Assembly: GCA_051294905.1 (NCBI GenBank)
Contig: CM119371.1
Span: 18,414,001 to 18,478,000, forward strand
Source of the DNA: Botryllus schlosseri
Lineage: Eukaryota
Direction of reading: 5' to 3'
DNA: 64,000 nt
This document shows positions 29,901-39,344 of this stretch, piece after piece. The position numbers and the translations under genes were made by a program. Positions within the stretch are counted from its first letter, which is position 1. The number at the start of each line of letters is the position of its first letter. The notes under the pieces were generated by a model. The model worked only from the letters and a program-made list of their open reading frames with translations. It was not told the DNA's origin and made no database searches.

Positions 29901-31510
29901 TGTGAAATTGGTACCATTGGATTCCTTGACCCAAAAAACATACATTTTGACACCAAAATGACGTCAATAGTAGCATTTGACCCAGACATAATCGCAAATG
30001 TAGATTTCAAATGGCGGCCATTTTGAAATCCAATATGGCGGACATAAAGAGAGAATTCCGAGTGGCTCAATATTTGAAAATGTTCGGAACATGTTAATAT
30101 GCATGTGTGCCAAATTTGGTGCTTGTATCACAAAATGCACAATAGGTTTGCTATGCTGCCCCACTATTTATTCACATCAACCGCCAGACATTTTTTCTAT
30201 TAAGACACCAAAATTTATTTGGAATATTACAAAGCTGGTTATTACAGTCGCTGCATCATGGGCAGTGTATAGCTCGGTAGAGTAACCTTGTTGTTTTGCT
30301 AGCTTCGCTAGCTGGTCATAATCTCATCGCTGGCCGTGAAATGGCGTGGTAAGTTTTCAAGTCTATGGCAAATATTTTTTGAAAAGGTCGCCAGATATAA
30401 ATAACGCTGTGAACCCGTGGGTATCTCATGATAGGTTTTCCAGTACCGTTAGCTAAAAGGCCCATGCTATCATTAGGAATTGATGACGATAAATACTTAG
30501 CGAAAAAATTCTGGATTTACCTCGTACAAATAAAGCGAATACCGGGCAGCAAAAGAAATTAAGGCCACTACACACGCATAGTGAGCATATGTTAATGTTT
30601 AGGATTTTTCCGACGTCCTGGCATTTGTCTTCTCTTCGCTAAAGCATACCAGACCAAGCTGTTTTAGAAGCTTTGTTCATGGGGTTCAAAATTGCTACTA
30701 GGGCTATTCAAAAACAACTTCTTTTTCATATTATACTGACTTATTCATAAAATTGTCAAGTTGCCAAAATTTAGGATTTCCAATCATAATACTTCTGGTG
30801 GGTATGGATCTATAATAAATAACTGAAGAACCTGCCACCATGAATAGGCTACTATTTTTTTCAAATCCAAATTTTTTACTCCTATAACTCTGTTTCTACT
30901 CGTTGGAATTGAGGCAAAATTTGTTGTCCATCGTATTTTCGGACAACCTGACTACTTTTTGGGGTGACCAGTAAAATTTAAATAAAAATTCAATAAATCC
31001 AAAACTTTTTTCTTATATAGTAATGCTTCTATAGGTTGAAATTGAGCCATGAATGGTGTGCAGTGTTTTTAGGCAACTTAACAATTTTATCAAGTAGGCC
31101 TAACCAGAAAAATTTTGGAAAATTGTGCACCTAATGTGCACTCTTGTCGTCAATTCCTATTCAATTACAAGTAGAAATAGCAATTTTCAAATTAACTCCG
31201 AGGTAGAAGTCGAATACGAAAGATCTCATAGTACTCGAGTAATTAATAAAGTAAATTGAGAAGAGGCGTCACACACTTTGATTAGTCAATCGGTGGTGAC
31301 TTATCTTTCAAAATTGTGAGGAAGATGTTCGTGACGCACAGAATGACTATTGCTGCCATGAATTCATGGTTAAATTACCAGCCTAAACGCAGGGTTTTAT
31401 TACAACATCATTGATGGAAGTGGCGTAAATCTATGCAGCCAGAACTACGGTCAGATTTATTCAATCTGTATCTAACGGCTGATGGTTCATATTATGGCTT
31501 GTTGTCGCGG

Positions 31511-31606
31511 GTGACCGATTTCGGTTTCGCAAAACTGGTAAAAGGTCGCACCTGGACTCTCTGCGACACTCCCGTGTATCTGCCGTCCGAGATGATTTTA
31601 AGTAAG
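31511..31606 (+). pseudogene. PRKACA-like: cAMP-dependent protein kinase catalytic subunit, exon 7 equivalent (degenerate)
   Basis: [32 protein letters not shown] vs [35 protein letters not shown]; exactly 96 nt; donor GTCAGT intact, acceptor mutated to CGG. Confidence 0.9.
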
Positions 31607-31763
31607 GTCAGTTGTGAATACCAGTAGTCAATGTCCGATATGTTATAATGTGACAGGGTCTAACCAAGTCACGAGGTTCCGAGTCACAAGTCAATCTCAC
31701 TTTTATAGTTTTGACTCGAGTCATTTTCAATTCACCTCCCAGTCAAGTCCGAGTCCAAGTGTA

Positions 31764-31789
31764 CTCGGCCTTTATGGCTAAGATCAAGT
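31764..31789 (+). ncRNA. U2: U2 snRNA 5' fragment (nt 8-32) forming the head of the retrotransposon; not a U2 gene
   Basis: CTCGGCCTTTATGGCTAAGATCAAGT vs U2 CTCGGCCTTTTGGCTAAGATCAAGT (one extra loop A; insect U2 has CCTTATGG). Confidence 0.85.
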
Positions 31790-32815
31790 TTCGCCGACTC
31801 CTACGTTCGACCACCGAAGACGCTGCCCACGCCGGACCACTCAACTCGACCAGAAGATTCTTCGACCGCCTCCGTCTCAGCAGCCGCTTGCCGCGCCTCT
31901 GCCGTGGGTCATCTGAACACCATCTCCTGCTACAACGTTGGAATCTCCGGAAAGGTTAGTTATTCCGGAGCTACAATTCCAACGCCGGCCAGAGATTCCT
32001 TGTTGCTCAACTAAGGCGTAGCCGTCTACGCTGCAACAAGGGATAAGCAACGAAGAAGCCTATCAATTCCGTTGCTTTTGCCACGGTACGGTGTGATTTG
32101 AACACGTCGTTCAACCTCCGGAGTGATCTTGGATCGCTTGCCTTAACTGTTCGACTATAGCAGAAAGGCTGCCGTGTGCAACTCTGGTCGAGGCCCTAGA
32201 CGTCGGGATTCCTCGCCACCTCGCTGCAAAGCATCTTCAAAGCAGCGAGACGAACTGCTACGCCGTCCAAAACAACATCATAAGAAGCGGAATATCAAGA
32301 ACATCAAGATCGCTTCGTAAGGACGGCGTAAGATCGACGGCGAATCGTTTGGACATAACATCAGTATCAACAGAGAGCCGTCGATCTGCAAAGGCGAGGA
32401 AAACCCGGGTGTTAACGCGCATTCGTAAGGTAAATTTCGTTTTTACCGTTCGCGTTAACATACGTGTAGGGCGTAGCAGTAGTGCTGCTGACGCGGGGGT
32501 AATTAAGTCCGGCGTGGGTACACAATTACGTCTGGCCTGTATCCTAACGCGTTCGCTATTCCTTTACGAACCCTTGGTTAACCTTTGTATTGTCCCTTTA
32601 ATTGTCTGTTACTATTCGTTTAATTTATCGCCTTTCCTATCCCCTCTAATAGCGAACGCTGGTGCAGGCCGCTTAGTCTTTGCTTCCAGTTATTGTCCCA
32701 ATTCTCATTTCGTTACGTTTAATTGTGTGCGTGATTTGATCTTACTTGTATTTATATTCGTTGTAATAGGTCGCGACTCGGTCACCTTTAGGCCTTTAGT
32801 CCGCAAATTTCTTCG

Positions 32816-35800
32816 ATGGCTAGCGGTAAAACTAGTCCTCTCGTTGTCCCTTACCACGGTCCAGGAACGAGCGTTGATGTCGCGTGTCCGAAACTAAATT
32901 GCGGTGCGTCCTTTTCTGCAGCCATAAGCTTAGTGGAACACTTGGCTTTTTTGCACCGCTGTGACAGTCTTATATACAAGTGTATGAAATGCGGTAATTT
33001 CTTTTCTGATTCTGATCATAAAATAAGCTGTCACTATAGGCGGTGCAAGGGCACGCGACATCATAGTTGGTTTGCCTGCCCCACTTGTGGAAAGTGTTTT
33101 AACGCGGTTCCGAAAGCGAAGGACCATTTTAAATCCAGTCACCCCGAGTCTGCTCTCCCCTTGGACTCGGCTTTTAAGCAATCTGGAATCCCCTCTGAAA
33201 TTTTATTGACGGTCCCCATTAAATATAACGGCAAGGATGCAACTAGGTATCCTTGCCCAGTTACCGGGTGCAATAAGCAGGGCTTCCCGTACAAATTGTT
33301 GGTTTCTCTCCAGAAGCACATTTGTAGCAAGCACGACATCACAAAAAATCTTATAAATTATGATGTCGTGTGCGGCAGATGTGACCAATGGACAATTCTT
33401 GAGCAGCCAGATATGATCGCTGCCAAGAACCATTGGTCCGCCTGCCGCCTACGGGAAGCTGTGCCTGCATCCGGTAACTTATCCCCAACCACGTCCACGA
33501 CTGTTTCGCGAGTCGACTCGATCTCCCCTATTTCTTCGCGTTCTGTAGTCCCCTTTGCCGTTGACGCAGCGGAAAACTCTCCTACTTCCTTTCCCGGTAC
33601 TATACCGGACCCTGCCTTATCCGTGGCCAATCTTTCACTCTCGTCGGATACCACCTCCTTGGTAACCGTGTCATCTAGGCCTTGGTCACGGATTTCGAAT
33701 AAATCTCGACGCTCTGTCAATTCTTCTAAAAAGTCAAAAAATAAAATAAAGTCCATGAGATTCTATCCCTCTTCTAGTAGTAATAGCTCCGTGTCTTCTG
33801 CTACATCCTCTGGGCCGCGCGACTCGCCAACAGTCGTGACGTCACCAAATTCCTCTGCGCCCCGAACCCCCTCCCCTATCCTTATCAGCCGATTCCCGGT
33901 CCGTAGGCCAGTCACTGGGGCCTTACCTGCCGCCCGTGCCTGGCTTCGGACTGCCGGGGATAGCAGACAGTCCCTAGGCCGACGTACCACACCCCCGAAA
34001 ATTGTGGTTTCCCCTCCAAGGGAGTTTACTCCCTCCCCACCCCAATCGTTAGTGAAGAGCCGTTTGACCCCAGTCTCTTCACCAAGCCCCATTCCATCAC
34101 TTTCGGAATTGTTTAAAGCACCTTTGCCTGGCAGCCCGAGCTCTACTCAAGAGCTCCTTGCCAGGTTGGACCGGGGAAGTCCCTTCCCCACCACACGCGA
34201 TGATCTGAAACAGATATCGTCGGCGGGATCGAGTCCGAACACCGTAGACTCGCCTCCCGTCGGTCAGGGCATGTCTCCCTCGCGCCCACTTGCGGACGAG
34301 ACATGTGCTGTGACGGCTGGACCAGCGGTCGAACGCTCCGAAGTTACCGGAGCTGTCGGCGGCTGTGAAAGCCCGACGAGATTGCCTCCTTCGGTAAGTG
34401 CACGTGACGGAGTAGATGTCGACGTGCCTTCTCCCGAACCGAGCGCACCTCGTGCAAAAGTCGATCTGCGCGAGTTGCGCTCGGAGCTTGCGGACTTGGT
34501 GTCAGAATGTCCTCACAACATCGAGGCTTTCGGGCACCTTGAACGTGAGCTGGAGCTCTGGACTGACCGTGCCTCTGATTGCAGCCGCCCTCCCGGCCGT
34601 AAACGCCCTAGGAACCGATACTCGCGCGAAGCACAACGCCGTGCTAAGGTCAATCAATTGAATGGCCAGCGCGAGTGTCGACCTGGGGCAGCCCAACATC
34701 TTCGGTCCGCTTTCTGGCGCAATCAGAAGGAAACGGTCAGACAGATCATCGAGGATGATTCTGGCGGTAAACGGTGCGAAATTCCTGCCGACATAATCGA
34801 GCGGAAATTTCGTGCTGACGCCGCCGCTGACGTCACTGATAATATTGCTGCTTTTCCTCGCTGGATGTCTCAGCACAGTTACCAGGGCAACCTGGCTTCT
34901 GCTGTTGACGACGAGTCGATTACTCCATCAGAGGTAGCAGGAGTGCTGGCGACCCTAAACACCAGTAGTTCGCCAGGCTCCGATGGTCTCACCTATGGAT
35001 TTTGGAAACGCTTAGACCCCAAGGGAGAAATCCTCTCTGAGCTTTTCGAAGTCTGTAGGCGTTGCCGACGTATTCCACTTGTGTGGCGCTCGTCGCGGGT
35101 AATCCTGATTCCAAAGGACCGCGACGGCGACATGCAAGACGTCGGTAACTGGAGACCCATCGCGCTATCCAGGACGCTGTATAAGATCTACGCGTCCGTA
35201 ATCGCTCGCCGTCTTCAGAGCTGGGCTTCCGATGGAGATGTTATCTCCATGGAACAAAAGGGGTTTGTTCCGCGAGAGGGGGTCTTCGAGCACGTGTTCA
35301 TGCTTGAGTCCTTGCTTGCGGATGCCAAGTCGTCAAGGCAGGATATTTATCTTGCCTGGCTTGACATCCGCAATGCATTCAGTACCGTTCGGCATGGATC
35401 CGTGATCGAGGTCCTGAGGCACTTTAACGCCCCGGAGTATCTGGTGGAGGTGATGACCGATATCTACGCGTCTAACGTGTTTGCAGTCGCGACCAGCTCT
35501 GGTCCGACAGACCCCATTCCAGCGGGGAAGGGTGTCCGTCAAGGATGCCCTTTATCGGCCATCACCTTCAACCTGGTCATGGAGGTTCTCCTGCGTGGCG
35601 TTGCTGGGCTTCAAAGCAGCGGTTATCGGTTTTCTGCAGCGGATGGCGTCACCGTCAGAGTTCAGGGTTACGCAGATGACACCTGTCTGTGTGCTTCGTC
35701 TCGCGCCCAGCTTCAAGCACAACTAGATCTGTGCGATGAATTTTCTCGGTGGTCTGGTATGAAATTCAAGCCCGCCAAGTGTCGTGTTCTTGCCTTGGGG

Positions 35801-37318
35801 TTCAAGGGAAGCCGATCGATCGTGGACTCGGCCCCGTTCTGCCTCGATGGTGGCGAGGTCCGGGTCCTCGATCGTGACTCTTTCTGGCGATACCTGGGCA
35901 AGAACATGGGTTACCAGGCAACCGAGAAAGGTGAGAAGGCCCTTAAAACTTTCGAGGCCTACTGTGACAGACTTTTCCTGTCACATCTCACCTCATTTCA
36001 GAAGCTGCTCGCACTGAAGAGGTTCGTTATTCCAAGAATCCTTTTTCAGTTGAGAATCCGCAAGTTTTTCCGAAGCGATCTGCGTCGCCTGGATGCGCGT
36101 ATCCGCACGTTGGTGAAGGCGGAATTCCGCCTCCCTAACAGAGCGTGTCAGCCCTTCTTCCATGCTGGGCTGACGACTGGCGGTCTGGGGATTCCCAACC
36201 TCTGCTGCGAAGCAGATGTGTTGAGGCTTTCCCAGGCCGTCAAAATGGTCAATTCCACTGACCCCTCTGTGCGGGCGGTTGCGCGTGGAAGGTTGGCGCT
36301 GGTCGTCCGGAGGACTTGCCGAGTCCCAGAGGCGTCGGAGACCCTGACAGTCGAGTTCTTGAACTGCGTGAGTCTAACAGGGCACGATTCCAGGGCGTAC
36401 GGAGACGCCTACGGGCTTTGGACCGAGGTCCGACCCGTTGCTAGGCGTCTCGGTGCTCGCTGGTTCGTGACCGAAGACGGGCTCTACCAGTTGGCTCTAG
36501 GCGCCGACTGCTGTCAGGATTTGGGTCGTCTTACCAAATTCCTTCACCTGAAGGTGAACCAACGTTGGAAGACACGGTGGATGGAGCTTCCCGACCAGGG
36601 CAAAACTGTGGAGTGCCACAGCCGGTACGGGAGCTCCAATCGCTTCCTCCGGTCTTCCAACGTCCTGACGGCAGTCGAGCGTAGCTGGATGCTTAAAGCT
36701 CGACTGAATCTTCTACCACTCCGGTCGATCCGGGGTCGGTTTAGAAAACGTGTGGAGCCAAGTGTGGTCTGCTGCAAGTGCGGACAGCATACTGAGACCC
36801 TGCCCCACGTACTGAACCACTGCCTGCCAGTGATGGATAGCATCACGAACAGGCACAATTCGGTACTTGGGGTGCTCCTGGACTGTATACCAAGCTCCTC
36901 TTCTTTTTCCAGATGCGATGTGGACCGCGTTTGCGAGGAGCACGCCACATTGGCCAACAGGCGGCTGAGACCCGACCTCATCTTAGCGGATCGTCGCCGG
37001 GTCTTGGTCATCGATGTGGTGTGCCCCTTCGAGAATGGAGTAGCCAGTATGGACGCTGCCGTTGCACTGAAACACTCAAAGTACAAGGACCTCTGTGAGT
37101 CTCTCCGCGTTGCCACGGCCAAGGTGGTGGAGATGCATACGTTCGCGGTCGGGTCCCTGGGGAGTTACCACCCCGGGAACCTGACCACCTTACGTGCGAT
37201 GGGTGTTTCGGTCTTCGAGTCCAGACTGGTCTCCGAGCGAGCCGTGGTCGCTTCTCAGCGCGGCTCTCATCGTGTCTGGAAGGCTTGGTGTAGTGTGCGG
37301 GACCACGAGAGGACTTGA
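32816..37318 (+). CDS. Polyprotein: 5 N-terminal Zn-finger motifs, S/P-rich linker, reverse transcriptase, CCHC knuckle, restriction-like endonuclease
   Basis: ATG at 32816, no stops; SSPGSDGL, WRPIAL, QKGF, WLDIRNAFSTV, GVRQGCPLS, GYADD, WRYLG; CCKCGQHTETLPHVLNHC; RHNSVL, RPDLIL, IDVVCPFE, KHSKY. Confidence 0.95.
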   Translation: MASGKTSPLVVPYHGPGTSVDVACPKLNCGASFSAAISLVEHLAFLHRCDSLIYKCMKCGNFFSDSDHKISCHYRRCKGTRHHSWFACPTCGKCFNAVPKAKDHFKSSHPESALPLDSAFKQSGIPSEILLTVPIKYNGKDATRYPCPVTGCNKQGFPYKLLVSLQKHICSKHDITKNLINYDVVCGRCDQWTILEQPDMIAAKNHWSACRLREAVPASGNLSPTTSTTVSRVDSISPISSRSVVPFAVDAAENSPTSFPGTIPDPALSVANLSLSSDTTSLVTVSSRPWSRISNKSRRSVNSSKKSKNKIKSMRFYPSSSSNSSVSSATSSGPRDSPTVVTSPNSSAPRTPSPILISRFPVRRPVTGALPAARAWLRTAGDSRQSLGRRTTPPKIVVSPPREFTPSPPQSLVKSRLTPVSSPSPIPSLSELFKAPLPGSPSSTQELLARLDRGSPFPTTRDDLKQISSAGSSPNTVDSPPVGQGMSPSRPLADETCAVTAGPAVERSEVTGAVGGCESPTRLPPSVSARDGVDVDVPSPEPSAPRAKVDLRELRSELADLVSECPHNIEAFGHLERELELWTDRASDCSRPPGRKRPRNRYSREAQRRAKVNQLNGQRECRPGAAQHLRSAFWRNQKETVRQIIEDDSGGKRCEIPADIIERKFRADAAADVTDNIAAFPRWMSQHSYQGNLASAVDDESITPSEVAGVLATLNTSSSPGSDGLTYGFWKRLDPKGEILSELFEVCRRCRRIPLVWRSSRVILIPKDRDGDMQDVGNWRPIALSRTLYKIYASVIARRLQSWASDGDVISMEQKGFVPREGVFEHVFMLESLLADAKSSRQDIYLAWLDIRNAFSTVRHGSVIEVLRHFNAPEYLVEVMTDIYASNVFAVATSSGPTDPIPAGKGVRQGCPLSAITFNLVMEVLLRGVAGLQSSGYRFSAADGVTVRVQGYADDTCLCASSRAQLQAQLDLCDEFSRWSGMKFKPAKCRVLALGFKGSRSIVDSAPFCLDGGEVRVLDRDSFWRYLGKNMGYQATEKGEKALKTFEAYCDRLFLSHLTSFQKLLALKRFVIPRILFQLRIRKFFRSDLRRLDARIRTLVKAEFRLPNRACQPFFHAGLTTGGLGIPNLCCEADVLRLSQAVKMVNSTDPSVRAVARGRLALVVRRTCRVPEASETLTVEFLNCVSLTGHDSRAYGDAYGLWTEVRPVARRLGARWFVTEDGLYQLALGADCCQDLGRLTKFLHLKVNQRWKTRWMELPDQGKTVECHSRYGSSNRFLRSSNVLTAVERSWMLKARLNLLPLRSIRGRFRKRVEPSVVCCKCGQHTETLPHVLNHCLPVMDSITNRHNSVLGVLLDCIPSSSSFSRCDVDRVCEEHATLANRRLRPDLILADRRRVLVIDVVCPFENGVASMDAAVALKHSKYKDLCESLRVATAKVVEMHTFAVGSLGSYHPGNLTTLRAMGVSVFESRLVSERAVVASQRGSHRVWKAWCSVRDHERT

Positions 37319-39344
37319 TCCCCCCCCTTCACGTGCTTTTTATTTGTTATGTGTTTTGTGTTATTGGTTATTAGCTTAGTCCGCTAGCCATCACGGGGTT
37401 CGACTGCAGGCAACTGGACACTGGATTGTATCACGGAACTCCTCCCCAAATTAACATAAATGGACCCCTGCTAGTTTTAGTTTTTTGAAGTTGTTTTTCT
37501 GAGCGGTTCTAAATGCTAAGGGGAGGAGTTCCCCCACCTCTCGACAAAAAGTTTGATTTGATTTTTCACCACCACAATTACTATGATAATGCCTGCAATC
37601 GGACCTCGCCAGTTCGTCCCTTATTTTTTGTGTTGTATGTCGGCCTCCACCACATATATCGTGTGTTTTTGGTGGAGGCCTTTGTCTGTGTTGGTGTCCC
37701 CTGTCCCCGGGCGAACTGGCCATGTCTTCTCTGGCCCTTATATTATTATCGCATTTTTCAGTATGTGATTTTCGCCATTTATTTTTTGTTAAATAAAATC
37801 TTTTTCCCCGTCACCGTAAATGGCGGGTATTGTTCTGTGATTATGTTTTGCATTTTCACAAGGTGACCGAAGTCGCGACTGTATTTATTTCAACGTGCAA
37901 TTTCATTTCATTGAATTTTTGCCGAAATAAAATATTACAACAAAAAAGTAGAGGGTAGAGTCAAAGTCATGGTGTTTGGACTCGAGTTCGAATTCAAGTC
38001 ATTATGTTCGCAGTCTAGTTTTGAGTTCAATCCACTTTTTTCAACTCTGTTCGAGCGATATAGAATGGCTCGCATTCATGGTATAGTAATTTTCCTCAGT
38101 CTTAGCAGTTTCTGGGCATATTTTCCAAGTATGAGGACTGATAGACGAAATACCAATCATGTGGTGACTTTATTATTCTTCAAAGTTACAATGAAATGTC
38201 TGTCTTGGCCGTCCTAGTCTCGAGTCATATGACTTGGTTCGAGTGATGCACAATGACTCGAGTCCAATTCGAGTCGATACAAAAATGGGCATCGGGTGAG
38301 TCGAGTAATTTTATGCATTTGAAAATATGACTCGAGTCAAGTCGCGTCATGTCTCGCGTCATTACAGCCTTGAAATGTGGTCCATCCTGATCTTCTTTGA
38401 GATCTTGGTAGCTTGTGTCAGTTGTCACACCTTGTTTAACGTCCAATGGAAATTAGATAAATTTGATTTTTTAATTTCAAATTTATTAATCTTTGTCATT
38501 CAGCTTTTCCCACGTAAGGGTTGCCAGTTGCCGCAGCTCATGAGTGATCCGCATTATAGTCTGTGCCAGAGATTAGCACTTGATTCCCTTCCTGCCCAAC
38601 CCTATCCATTGTGCTGACTTGGGATAGGCACTGGAATCGCTTTTGCTTGTCAGTGGCAGGGTTTTAGGGTGACGTCGGTTCGGAATTCTGGCCTGCCGAA
38701 TTGGAGACCAGAGCACGACCCTATGAGCTATAGCGGCTACCTCAATCTTGACTGTCCCGGTCCCTGAAATTTATTTTCAAGTTTCTTACGGCTTGGATAA
38801 ATGTTATTTGGACATGTGATGGTTTGTTTTTCGCTCGAGAACACTGCATTGATATCTGATTTTGTTAAATATTGATATCAATCTGTTGTTGATTGATGTT
38901 ACCGCCTGCCCCTGCTTACAGCATAGCATGTCTGTTTGACTCAACCATCCATTCTTTTTTCCAGAATGTTTTATCGACAGGATTCAACTGGGATGCTGGA
39001 GAACAACCATACCTATCTGGTGTTTTGCTGGAACTGGAAAATGCGCTCATCAATCATGCCATGGAAGCATCGTGTGTAAAGTATAAATATTAATAATCTC
39101 CTTAAATTTCTTCCCGTAGAAATAGCAATTTGAAGGCTTGTCAAAGCTACTTCAACTATAAGTTTAAAATGAATGGTATGAAAGTACTCGAGCAAGTAGT
39201 TTTAAAGACTTTTCGCAGGTGGCTACTTTAGGCTAACGCAGTTGTTCACCACCTTTTTGGTCATGCCCCCCTTGATGATGGTCAAAAATTCCACGCCTTA
39301 TCGAAATATAAAAAATCTAATGTTTGCAATCCCAACGCAATGAC

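What the first reader, a model, noticed from the sequence alone, without database searches (positions are those of the whole stretch)
31755..37960. Intact Utopia-like retrotransposon carrying a U2 snRNA 5' head but inserted outside U2, in a MITE
Seen: the element begins with U2 nt 8-32 (31764-31789), ending immediately before the branch-point recognition sequence GUAGUA (U2 nt 33-38). Its 3' flank is not U2 (GTAGAGGGTAGAG rather than GTAGTATCTG), and both flanks rejoin one hAT MITE with about 4 nt lost. The 1500-aa ORF has no disabling lesion. Established: Utopia (NeSL clade) elements target the 5' region of U2 genes, and R2-type elements are co-transcribed with their host RNA gene. Inference: the template was a U2-promoter co-transcript from a parent copy inside a U2 gene, copied to within about 7 nt of the cap and integrated off-target. 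The host site has weak U2-target similarity (CCAAGTG...AGTAG vs TCAAGTGTAGTA). This would be a recent, possibly active, relaxed-specificity RLE element, relevant to RNA-templated insertion tools.
Basis: partly seen in the sequence, partly recalled or inferred. Interest (0 to 1): 0.85.

Follow-up and report, generated by a model that had tools for sequence, protein, structure and literature searches.

The report
U2-headed Utopia/YURE retrotransposon, off-target copy
This is a full-length, protein-intact copy of a tunicate jumping gene that normally lives inside U2 spliceosomal RNA genes; it landed in an ordinary repeat but still carries the first letters of U2, which suggests that the family is copied from RNAs started at the U2 gene promoter.

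Summary
Observation confirmed. Window 31764-37947 (+) is a 6.18-kb non-LTR retrotransposon. It has one intact 1500-aa ORF with N-terminal zinc fingers, a reverse transcriptase (RT) and a CCHC finger plus restriction-like endonuclease (RLE).

- **U2 head.** The first 26 nt match exactly the U2 variant of four U2 genes on contig 14.
- **Flanks.** They rejoin a high-copy MITE-like repeat, about 3 nt shorter than intact copies. "hAT" was not verified.
- **Classification.** The RT groups with Ciona and Clavelina YURE-like elements, inside the Utopia/NeSL group and outside R2.
- **Census.** All four contig-14 U2 genes are split by this family, with U2 resuming at nt 37-39. Only two intact U2 target sites remain. 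At least 23 of 27 scorable 3' ends are outside U2.
- **Heads.** Nine off-target copies carry the head, starting at U2 nt 1 to about 10, never upstream of nt 1.
- **Mother-daughter pair.** A U2-resident copy and a contig-2 off-target copy are 99.6% identical.

The co-transcript reading is therefore well supported, though only by inference, because RNA reads gave nothing. "Recent/active" is only partly supported: the window copy has no U2 promoter, and its nearest relative is about 95% identical.

New here: the leader holds a second U2-derived block (29/32, stem-loop III). Clavelina elements show the same. Another window's first-stage note in this scan says likewise.

The parts
31654..31763 (.). 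Left part of the interrupted MITE-like high-copy repeat (5' flank of the insertion)
   Evidence: 85-95% identical to many dispersed copies (766 first-look candidates). It aligns continuously with the 3' flank in intact copies.
31764..31789 (+). U2 snRNA head: U2 nt 8-32 in human numbering, contig-14 variant with loop TTTAT
   Evidence: 26/26 identical to the native 5' parts of the contig-14 U2 genes. 24/26 to the contig-1 U2 genes. The 22-nt core is rare genome-wide.
31790..32815 (+). Non-coding leader (5' UTR). Highly conserved structured part at about 31940-32050.
   Evidence: No ORF conserved with the related element L078. Alignment and consensus fold of 10 copies. No Rfam family, including HDV-like ribozymes and U2 as a whole.
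31883..31914 (+). Second U2-derived block inside the leader, matching U2 nt 127-159 (stem-loop III region)
   Evidence: 29/32 identical to the contig-14 U2, at almost the same distance from the 5' end as in U2. Local score 49 against a shuffle maximum of 27 (0 of 1000 shuffles reached it). Present but more diverged in older subfamilies, and deleted in one.
32816..37318 (+). Single intact ORF, 1500 aa
   Evidence: The genome scan reports no stops in this copy.
32885..33145 (+). N-terminal C2H2-type zinc fingers (aa 24-110)
   Evidence: Aligns to the zinc fingers of R2Tg (9dou) and to Zif268-type fingers.
35114..35794 (+). Reverse transcriptase core (aa 767-993). The RT plus thumb alignment spans aa 617-1152.
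   Evidence: Pfam RVT_1, E 6e-32. R2Tg/R2 structures, E 2e-74.
36572..37216 (+). C-terminal CCHC zinc finger and restriction-like endonuclease (aa 1253-1467; CCKCG...H...HC, RPDLIL...D...K)
   Evidence: Aligned to the R2Tg C-terminal domain. No APE (apurinic/apyrimidinic-type) endonuclease domain in Pfam.
37319..37947 (+). 3' UTR with AATAAA (37926-37931) and a short A-rich tail ending at 37947
   Evidence: The same tail abuts U2 nt 37-39 in four contig-14 copies.
37948..38033 (.). Right part of the interrupted MITE-like repeat (3' flank)

Best explanation
The window holds a full-length off-target copy of a tunicate family of RLE-type non-LTR retrotransposons. The family belongs to the YURE branch of the Utopia/NeSL group, and its home site is U2 snRNA genes.

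Resident copies: these split all four contig-14 U2 genes. The arrangement is U2 promoter, then U2 nt 1-32, then the element, then U2 nt 37-39 onward.

Proposed transcription (inferred): RNA starts at U2 +1 from the external U2 promoter. It runs through the U2 head, a roughly 1-kb non-coding leader and the single ORF, and ends at the element's own AATAAA and A-rich tail.

Proposed integration (inferred): the protein nicks the bottom strand at U2 nt 36-39 and primes reverse transcription there (target-primed reverse transcription). At a U2 target, the U2-complementary 3' end of the cDNA can anneal to the upstream half of the target and set a clean 5' junction.

Off-target events: only about six U2 genes exist in the assembly and four are occupied. 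The endonuclease is also permissive; a residual TA/TAT preference is seen. So most new copies land elsewhere. Those copies keep the U2 head, more or less 5'-truncated (from nt 8 in the window), but not the promoter. They are therefore probably dead ends for transcription unless read through from a host gene.

Leader origin: the leader itself descends from a longer U2 sequence, shown by the head plus a stem-loop III block.

Shown versus inferred: the anatomy, the census, the junctions and the phylogeny are shown. The U2-promoter start, the homology-guided 5' joining and the silence of off-target copies are inferred.
For: Architecture and clade.

Home site: four 3' junctions join the tail directly to U2 nt 37-39, all on contig 14. 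They pair with four U2 5' halves that carry the conserved upstream region shared with the intact contig-1 genes.

Target pool: only two intact U2 target sites remain in the assembly.

Heads: 17 occurrences of the head core, 13 of them dispersed. Of these 13, 9 (8 independent) are attached to the family leader. Those heads start at U2 nt 1 (three copies), about 3-4, 6, 8 and about 10, with unrelated upstream DNA and never any promoter sequence. The MITE empty sites contain no U2 sequence.

Mother-daughter pair: the U2-resident copy at contig 14, 25.69 Mb and the off-target copy on contig 2 are 99.6% identical over 2.09 kb, and both have intact ORFs.

Selection: dN/dS (ratio of protein-changing to silent substitution rates) is about 0.17-0.21 between the window ORF and its two closest copies.

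Site preference: off-target 3' flanks start with TAT in 6 of 23 cases against a 4.2% background (p = 3e-4), matching U2 nt 37-39.

Native target sequence: 5'-truncated insertions in U2 keep target nt 1-37 or 1-33, which shows that the contig-14 variant head is native U2.

Second U2 block. A parallel block occurs in Clavelina.

No ribozyme or RNA family was found in the leader.
Against: No transcript evidence. An RNA-seq run sampled at about 6% gave essentially no reads on the U2-resident copy, a second run gave none, and the contig runs look like DNA.

snRNA-type promoters normally yield short RNAs, so a 6-kb transcript from one is an assumption.

The parent of the window copy is not in the assembly. 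The nearest copies are about 95-97% identical over the ends that could be compared, and the last 450 nt of the 3' UTR is at most 91% identical to any other copy.

For the three heads that start at nt 1, the 3' flanks could not be recovered.

The tree has no Repbase-labelled references, and the identification of Q76IM9 as YURECi is my inference.
Confidence: 0.8

Rival explanations
1. The U2-like head and leader are an autonomous internal promoter or 5' UTR of the element. Transcription starts at element nt 1 wherever the copy sits, so off-target copies such as the window's are themselves active sources, and the head says nothing about the U2 promoter.
For: Many non-LTR elements use internal 5' UTR promoters (general knowledge). 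The junction at U2 nt 32 and the leader are inherited by all subfamilies, down to 72-76% identity. The leader has a strongly conserved, structured segment. Three off-target copies keep intact ORFs.
Against: snRNA genes have no known internal promoter (PMC4494074 states none has been reported). The only near-identical pair found has the U2-resident copy as one member. Heads are variably 5'-truncated, so many off-target copies lack the putative start. No RNA was detected, although the test had low power.
Confidence: 0.13
2. The head was not carried by the element RNA from a U2-resident parent. Either it was added at each event by template switching of the RT onto mature U2 snRNA, or the element inserted into pre-existing U2 pseudogene fragments.
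For: R2-type RTs do jump between templates. Recurrent 5' addition of U1/U2 sequence is described for SINEU (PMC4494074). Crocodilian Utopia copies sometimes sit in U2-like sequence (PMC4640811, S4 Fig).
Against: A jump onto U2 snRNA would add U2 from its 3' end. Here every full-length copy shares the same internal junction (U2 nt 32 joined to the leader), and nothing of U2 nt 33 onward follows the head. Intact copies of the MITE have no U2 sequence at the site. The 3' flanks of the three fully characterised off-target copies are not U2. Template switching remains a plausible origin of the ancestral U2-derived leader, but not of each individual head.
Confidence: 0.04
3. Assembly artefact: the element, or its junction with the MITE, is a mis-join.
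For: None specific. Repeats are prone to mis-assembly.
Against: Both junctions are clean and complementary within one MITE copy. The copy has its own sequence variants, being at most 97% identical to any other copy. Several public DNA runs hold more than half of its sampled words.
Confidence: 0.02

Closest known systems
Utopia (U2 snRNA gene-targeting RLE non-LTR retrotransposons; Kojima & Jurka 2015, PMC4640811)
   Same: Single ORF with N-terminal zinc fingers, RT, and a C-terminal zinc finger plus RLE. The 3' junction lies at U2 nt 39. Disrupted U2 genes outnumber intact ones. Families with weak specificity that mostly sit outside U2 are already described (reptiles, ants). A short target-like motif is seen at off-target sites.
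   Different: Here the full-length element carries U2 nt 1-32 as a heritable 5' head that travels to non-U2 sites, and its leader contains a second U2-derived block. I found no mention of promoter use or co-transcription in that paper. In the tree the element sits in the sister (YURE-like) clade rather than with the arthropod Utopia sequences.
YURE (YURECi, YURE_CSa, YURE-2_Cis of Ciona; Kojima & Fujiwara 2004, cited in PMC4640811)
   Same: These are the nearest named relatives. Ciona Q76IM9 and two Clavelina proteins are 42-43% identical over RT-RLE and form a supported clade with the window protein. The hosts are tunicates. YURE is reported to associate with U2-derived sequence (U2_sat).
   Different: This family inserts into bona fide U2 genes with promoters at the Utopia site. 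Clavelina relatives give about a 24-bp duplication of U2 (nt 33-56), whereas here nt 33-36/38 are lost. That Q76IM9 is YURECi is inferred, not verified.
R2 (28S rDNA-specific RLE retrotransposon)
   Same: The domain order aligns to the solved R2 structures. It depends on the host gene's transcription. In many R2 lineages the RNA keeps upstream 28S sequence, which can anneal the cDNA to the target (established R2 literature, recalled from memory).
   Different: No 28S target, no Myb domain detected, and no HDV-like ribozyme detected. The RT falls outside the R2-like clade. The proposed start is the host gene's own +1, so no processing step is needed.
SINEU (SINEs with U1/U2-derived heads; Kojima 2015, PMC4494074) and Keno (Tx1-clade, APE-type, same U2 site)
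   Same: SINEU are retroposons whose 5' head is U2-derived and whose transcription may depend on upstream promoters. Keno uses the same U2 insertion site.
   Different: SINEU are short, non-coding, crocodilian elements with CR1/other partners. Keno has an APE endonuclease, whereas this element has an RLE.

Membership tests
Utopia / NeSL-group RLE non-LTR retrotransposons | Single ORF with N-terminal zinc fingers, central RT, C-terminal CCHC finger plus PD-(D/E)xK-type endonuclease, and no APE domain | tested here: met
   Pfam finds RVT_1 only. Three-domain alignment to R2Tg, including the CCHC finger and the RPD...D...K motif.
Utopia / NeSL-group RLE non-LTR retrotransposons | Insertion in U2 snRNA genes with the 3' flank starting at about U2 nt 39 | tested here: met
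   Met for the family: four contig-14 copies join the tail to U2 nt 37-39. Not met for the window copy itself, which sits in a MITE-like repeat.
Utopia / NeSL-group RLE non-LTR retrotransposons | RT groups with Utopia/NeSL/YURE and not with R2 | tested here: met
   Quick maximum-likelihood tree of 31 proteins. The YURE-like clade has support 100. It joins the arthropod-Utopia plus NeSL clade at 97, and the R2-like clade is separate at 99. One ant member was verified by its U2 nt-39 flank. No Repbase references were available.
Utopia / NeSL-group RLE non-LTR retrotransposons | Lacks the R2 Myb domain (criterion used in PMC13188248) | tested here: inconclusive
   No Myb family in Pfam at E <= 0.01, and the R2Tg alignment skips the Myb region. 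No structure prediction was done.
YURE (tunicate lineage) | Closest RT relatives are the Ciona YURE elements | tested here: met
   Clade with Ciona Q76IM9 and the Clavelina proteins, support 96. The label of Q76IM9 as YURECi is inferred.
YURE (tunicate lineage) | Association with the U2-derived satellite U2_sat | not tested
R2 | Specific insertion in 28S rDNA | tested here: not met
   All characterised junctions are U2 or dispersed non-rDNA sequence.
hAT MITE (host of the insertion) | Terminal inverted repeats of hAT type and an 8-bp target-site duplication | tested here: inconclusive
   It is a high-copy repeat with GACTCGAGTC palindromes. Its termini and duplication were not resolved.

The most novel reading that the evidence does not exclude
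The U2-derived leader (U2 nt 1-32 plus a stem-loop III block, and in relatives a stem-loop IV-like hairpin) may be a functional module that tunicate YURE/Utopia elements keep matched to their host's U2. It would let the element RNA be made from the snRNA promoter, mimic part of U2, and guide homology-directed 5' joining at U2 genes. Near-saturation of a tiny U2 gene pool (4 of 6 occupied) would then drive the spread to TAT-like off-target sites.
Probability: 0.25. Interest if true: 0.65.

Novelty: new variant of a known kind. Interest (0 to 1): 0.5.

Why it matters
It offers genomic evidence for how a Utopia-type element is expressed. The suggested template is an RNA that begins at the U2 gene's own start site, so U2-resident copies act as masters and dispersed copies as by-products. 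I did not find this stated in the paper that named Utopia.

It also documents a genome in which the element has taken four of six assembled U2 genes, and where relaxed target choice is the main mode of spread. The U2-derived leader, seen in two tunicate lineages each matching its own host's U2, raises a testable question about RNA mimicry or repeated capture of snRNA sequence by retrotransposons. Site-specific RLE elements are being developed as gene-insertion tools, so a natural example with a short residual motif and a target-homologous 5' end is of some practical interest.

Tried and rejected
1. Rfam. There was no hit at gathering thresholds in the window. No U2 or ribozyme hit at E <= 10 on 31600-32200. 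The leader is therefore not recognisable as a whole U2 by the covariance model.

2. Similarity of the leader hairpin to U2 stem-loop IV was not significant (1914 of 2000 shuffles scored as high). The middle block (14/17) is marginal, p about 0.015.

3. RNA evidence. One RNA-seq run sampled at about 6% gave 19 partial reads on repeats only. Another gave none. Two runs labelled 'RNA?' cover the non-transcribed flank and look like DNA. This is no verdict on expression.

4. Search for an ORF1. The 182-aa upstream frame is not conserved with the related element L078.

5. hAT classification of the MITE was not resolved.

As a result, four dispersed heads without a leader match (contigs 4, 9, 13 and 14 at 21.5 Mb) and the 3' flanks of the three nt-1 heads stay uncharacterised.

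7. The exact event at the MITE site (origin of the GTA before the head: filler, a 3-bp duplication, or local divergence) could not be resolved from copies that are 10-15% diverged.

8. L078, a 61%-identical relative, is a public contig bounded by SMART-type adaptor sequence and ending in tail|TCTGTTC (U2 nt 39). It may be a cDNA, but the library type is unknown, so it is not used as expression evidence.

Full report
**What is there**

Window 31764-37947 (+ strand) is a 6,184-bp non-LTR retrotransposon.
- It opens with CTCGGCCTTTATGGCTAAGATCAAGT (31764-31789).
- A roughly 1-kb non-coding leader follows, then one ORF of 1500 aa (32816-37318).
- The 629-bp 3' UTR has AATAAA at 37926-37931 and a short A-rich tail ending at 37947.
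- Pfam sees only RVT_1 (aa 767-993) and no APE domain.
- Against solved structures the protein aligns to the R2Tg and other R2 proteins in three blocks: zinc fingers (aa 24-110), RT plus thumb (aa 617-1152), and CCHC finger plus restriction-like endonuclease (aa 1253-1467).
- The upstream 182-aa frame is not conserved in a related element, so I treat the element as single-ORF.

**The U2 head is real**

The genome (495 Mb; a tunicate according to the protein hits and an earlier scan note) has two intact U2 genes on contig 1. It also has U2 pieces on contig 14.
- The head matches U2 nt 8-32 at 24/26 against the contig-1 genes.
- It matches 26/26 against the variant (loop TTTAT) carried by the contig-14 genes.
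- A 22-nt core of the head occurs 17 times in the assembly with up to 2 mismatches. The reversed control occurs 0 times.

**The flanks**

The 114 nt before the element and the sequence after it belong to one high-copy repeat with 766 first-look candidates. Intact copies run straight through the insertion point. The window copy is about 3 nt shorter there and shows no clear target-site duplication. Those intact copies contain no U2 sequence, so the head arrived with the element. I could not confirm that the repeat is a hAT MITE.

**Family census**

- *3' ends.* A search with the 3' end found at least 41 matches. Of the 30 fetched, 27 had a scorable end junction. Four tails join directly to U2 nt 37-39 (TCTGTTC..., or TATCTGTTC...), all on contig 14. 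One abuts another copy in tandem. The rest are dispersed non-U2 sites on many contigs.
- *Pairing with U2 5' halves.* The four U2 3' halves pair with four U2 5' halves that carry the roughly 100-nt upstream region shared with the intact contig-1 genes.
- *Occupancy.* Every contig-14 U2 gene is therefore occupied. Two hold full-length copies and two hold 5'-truncated ones.
- *Remaining targets.* A pattern scan across the insertion site finds only two intact targets in the assembly. Arrays may be collapsed.
- *ORFs.* Five copies have uninterrupted 1500-aa ORFs: the window, two in U2 on contig 14, and two off-target on contigs 2 and 5.

**Heads at off-target sites**

Eleven copies reach the 5' end.
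- The two in U2 read promoter, then ATCGCTT, then the head.
- The other nine have unrelated upstream DNA. Eight are independent, because two lie in a local duplication. Their heads start at U2 nt 1 (three copies), about 3-4, 6, 8 (the window) and about 10.
- None continues into promoter sequence.
- All share the same boundary, U2 nt 32 joined to the leader. This includes subfamilies only 72-86% identical to the window copy.
- 5'-truncated insertions in U2 keep target nt 1-37 or 1-33. This shows that the TTTAT variant is native to those genes, and that little target sequence is lost at cleavage.
- The U2-resident copy at contig 14, 25.69 Mb and the off-target copy on contig 2 are 99.6% identical over 2.09 kb. 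That fits a mother-daughter or sister pair.

Together these points support RNAs that begin at U2 +1 of U2-resident copies and are reverse-transcribed, with small 5' losses, at both U2 and non-U2 sites.

**The window copy itself**

- Its closest sampled relatives are about 95-97% identical over the ends that could be compared. The last 450 nt of its 3' UTR are at most 91% identical to any other copy.
- In the coding parts that could be compared, dN/dS against its two closest copies is 0.17-0.21. Most of the difference therefore arose in selected, active lineages rather than by decay after insertion.
- Its parent is not in the assembly.
- It lacks the U2 upstream region, so I expect it to be silent unless read through.
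- It lies just downstream of a kinase-like exon fragment on the same strand, so intronic read-through is conceivable.

**Target choice**

Off-target 3' flanks begin with TA in 9 of 23 cases and with TAT in 6 of 23. The backgrounds are 11.9% and 4.2% (p = 8e-4 and 3e-4). TAT matches U2 nt 37-39. The window's own site (CCAAGT...GTAG) resembles U2 nt 27-36 only loosely.

**Classification**

- The best named relatives over RT-RLE are Clavelina lepadiformis proteins and Ciona intestinalis Q76IM9, at 42-43% identity. Arthropod sequences come next, then Ulp1-bearing Caenorhabditis NeSL proteins. R2-like proteins are more distant.
- In a quick maximum-likelihood tree the window protein joins a 61%-identical public relative (support 100), then the Ciona/Clavelina group (96), then marine metagenome sequences (100).
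- This clade is sister to an arthropod plus NeSL clade. The two together (97) exclude the R2-like clade (99).
- The ant member of the sister clade has the canonical Utopia junction, tail|TCTGTTCTTATCAG.
- Kojima & Jurka (PMC4640811) place YURE with Utopia and NeSL. They also describe weakly specific Utopia families, so off-target insertion as such is known. I found no discussion there of promoter use or co-transcription.

**A second U2-derived block**

- Leader nt 120-151 (window 31883-31914) matches U2 nt 127-159 at 29/32, at almost the same distance from the 5' end as in U2. None of 1000 shuffles reached its score.
- A further block (14/17) is marginal, and the resemblance to stem-loop IV is not significant.
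- The block is present but more diverged in older subfamilies.
- In Clavelina, elements lie in a U2 array with about a 24-bp duplication of U2 (nt 33-56). Their leaders hold a 12-13-nt exact match to Clavelina's own stem-loop III at the equivalent offset.
- A TARA (marine metagenome) scaffold relative starts with U2 nt 4-60 and a stem-loop IV-like hairpin.
- The leader therefore appears to descend from a longer U2 sequence. It has either been captured repeatedly or kept in step with host U2.
- A first-stage note on another window of this genome (s1-300885) makes the same suggestion. I reached it independently and tested it only in part.

**Expression**

Laying reads on the U2-resident copy gave no usable RNA signal. 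The test had little power. The mechanism therefore rests on genomic inference.

**Verdict**

The element is a new tunicate member of the YURE/Utopia group. Its heritable U2-derived 5' module is noteworthy but not revolutionary. It also gives clear genomic traces of U2-start-site templates.

Noticed in passing
window 31445-31610 (+): Kinase-like exon fragment (…[30 protein letters not shown]) followed by GTAAG. It gives a weak Pkinase hit (E 0.0045). The MITE and the element lie just downstream on the same strand, probably inside an intron in sense orientation.
   Followed up: partly
G000 contig 14: 22.18, 22.19, 24.25 and 25.69 Mb; contig 1: 6.173 and 6.181 Mb: All four contig-14 U2 genes are split by this family, and only two intact U2 target sites are found in the assembly. 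An earlier scan note places the contig-1 genes inside histone repeat units. U2 arrays may be collapsed in the assembly.
   Followed up: partly
G000 C4:8464931, C9:14519083, C13:4704989, C14:21526191: Four further dispersed copies of the U2 head core gave no match to the family leader. They could be non-autonomous derivatives, U2 retropseudogenes of the contig-14 type, or another subfamily.
   Followed up: no
L043, L059 (3' flanks); L076 (5' flank); L015/L016 (5' ends): A repeat containing CTAATTGGCGACACGC adjoins several copies on either side. In one older subfamily it replaces the first 20 nt of the head. This may be a preferred off-target site or a 5' transduction.
   Followed up: no
L044 and L049 (contig 9): Two copies have 3' flanks with a tRNA-like T-arm (GGTTCGATCCC), suggesting insertion next to a tRNA-derived SINE or tRNA gene.
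   Followed up: no
L053 (contig 14, 24.307 Mb): The tail of one copy is joined directly to a 5'-truncated second copy (tandem arrangement), as reported for Nasonia Utopia.
   Followed up: no
L078 (public contig, 6150 bp): A 61%-identical relative from another organism is bounded by SMART-type adaptor sequences and ends in tail|TCTGTTC (U2 nt 39-69). It may be a cDNA that reads through into the U2 3' half.
   Followed up: partly
L079 200-430 and L080 880-1070 (Clavelina lepadiformis): Long poly(A) tails are joined to U2 at nt 31-33, within a repeating unit of U2 promoter, U2 nt 1-56 and the element. This is a U2 array heavily occupied by YURE-like elements, with about a 24-bp duplication of U2.
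   Followed up: partly
window 31940-32050 (leader): This segment is more conserved among subfamilies than the rest of the leader. It is predicted to form long hairpins, with a few compensatory changes (5 of 58 pairs).
   Followed up: partly
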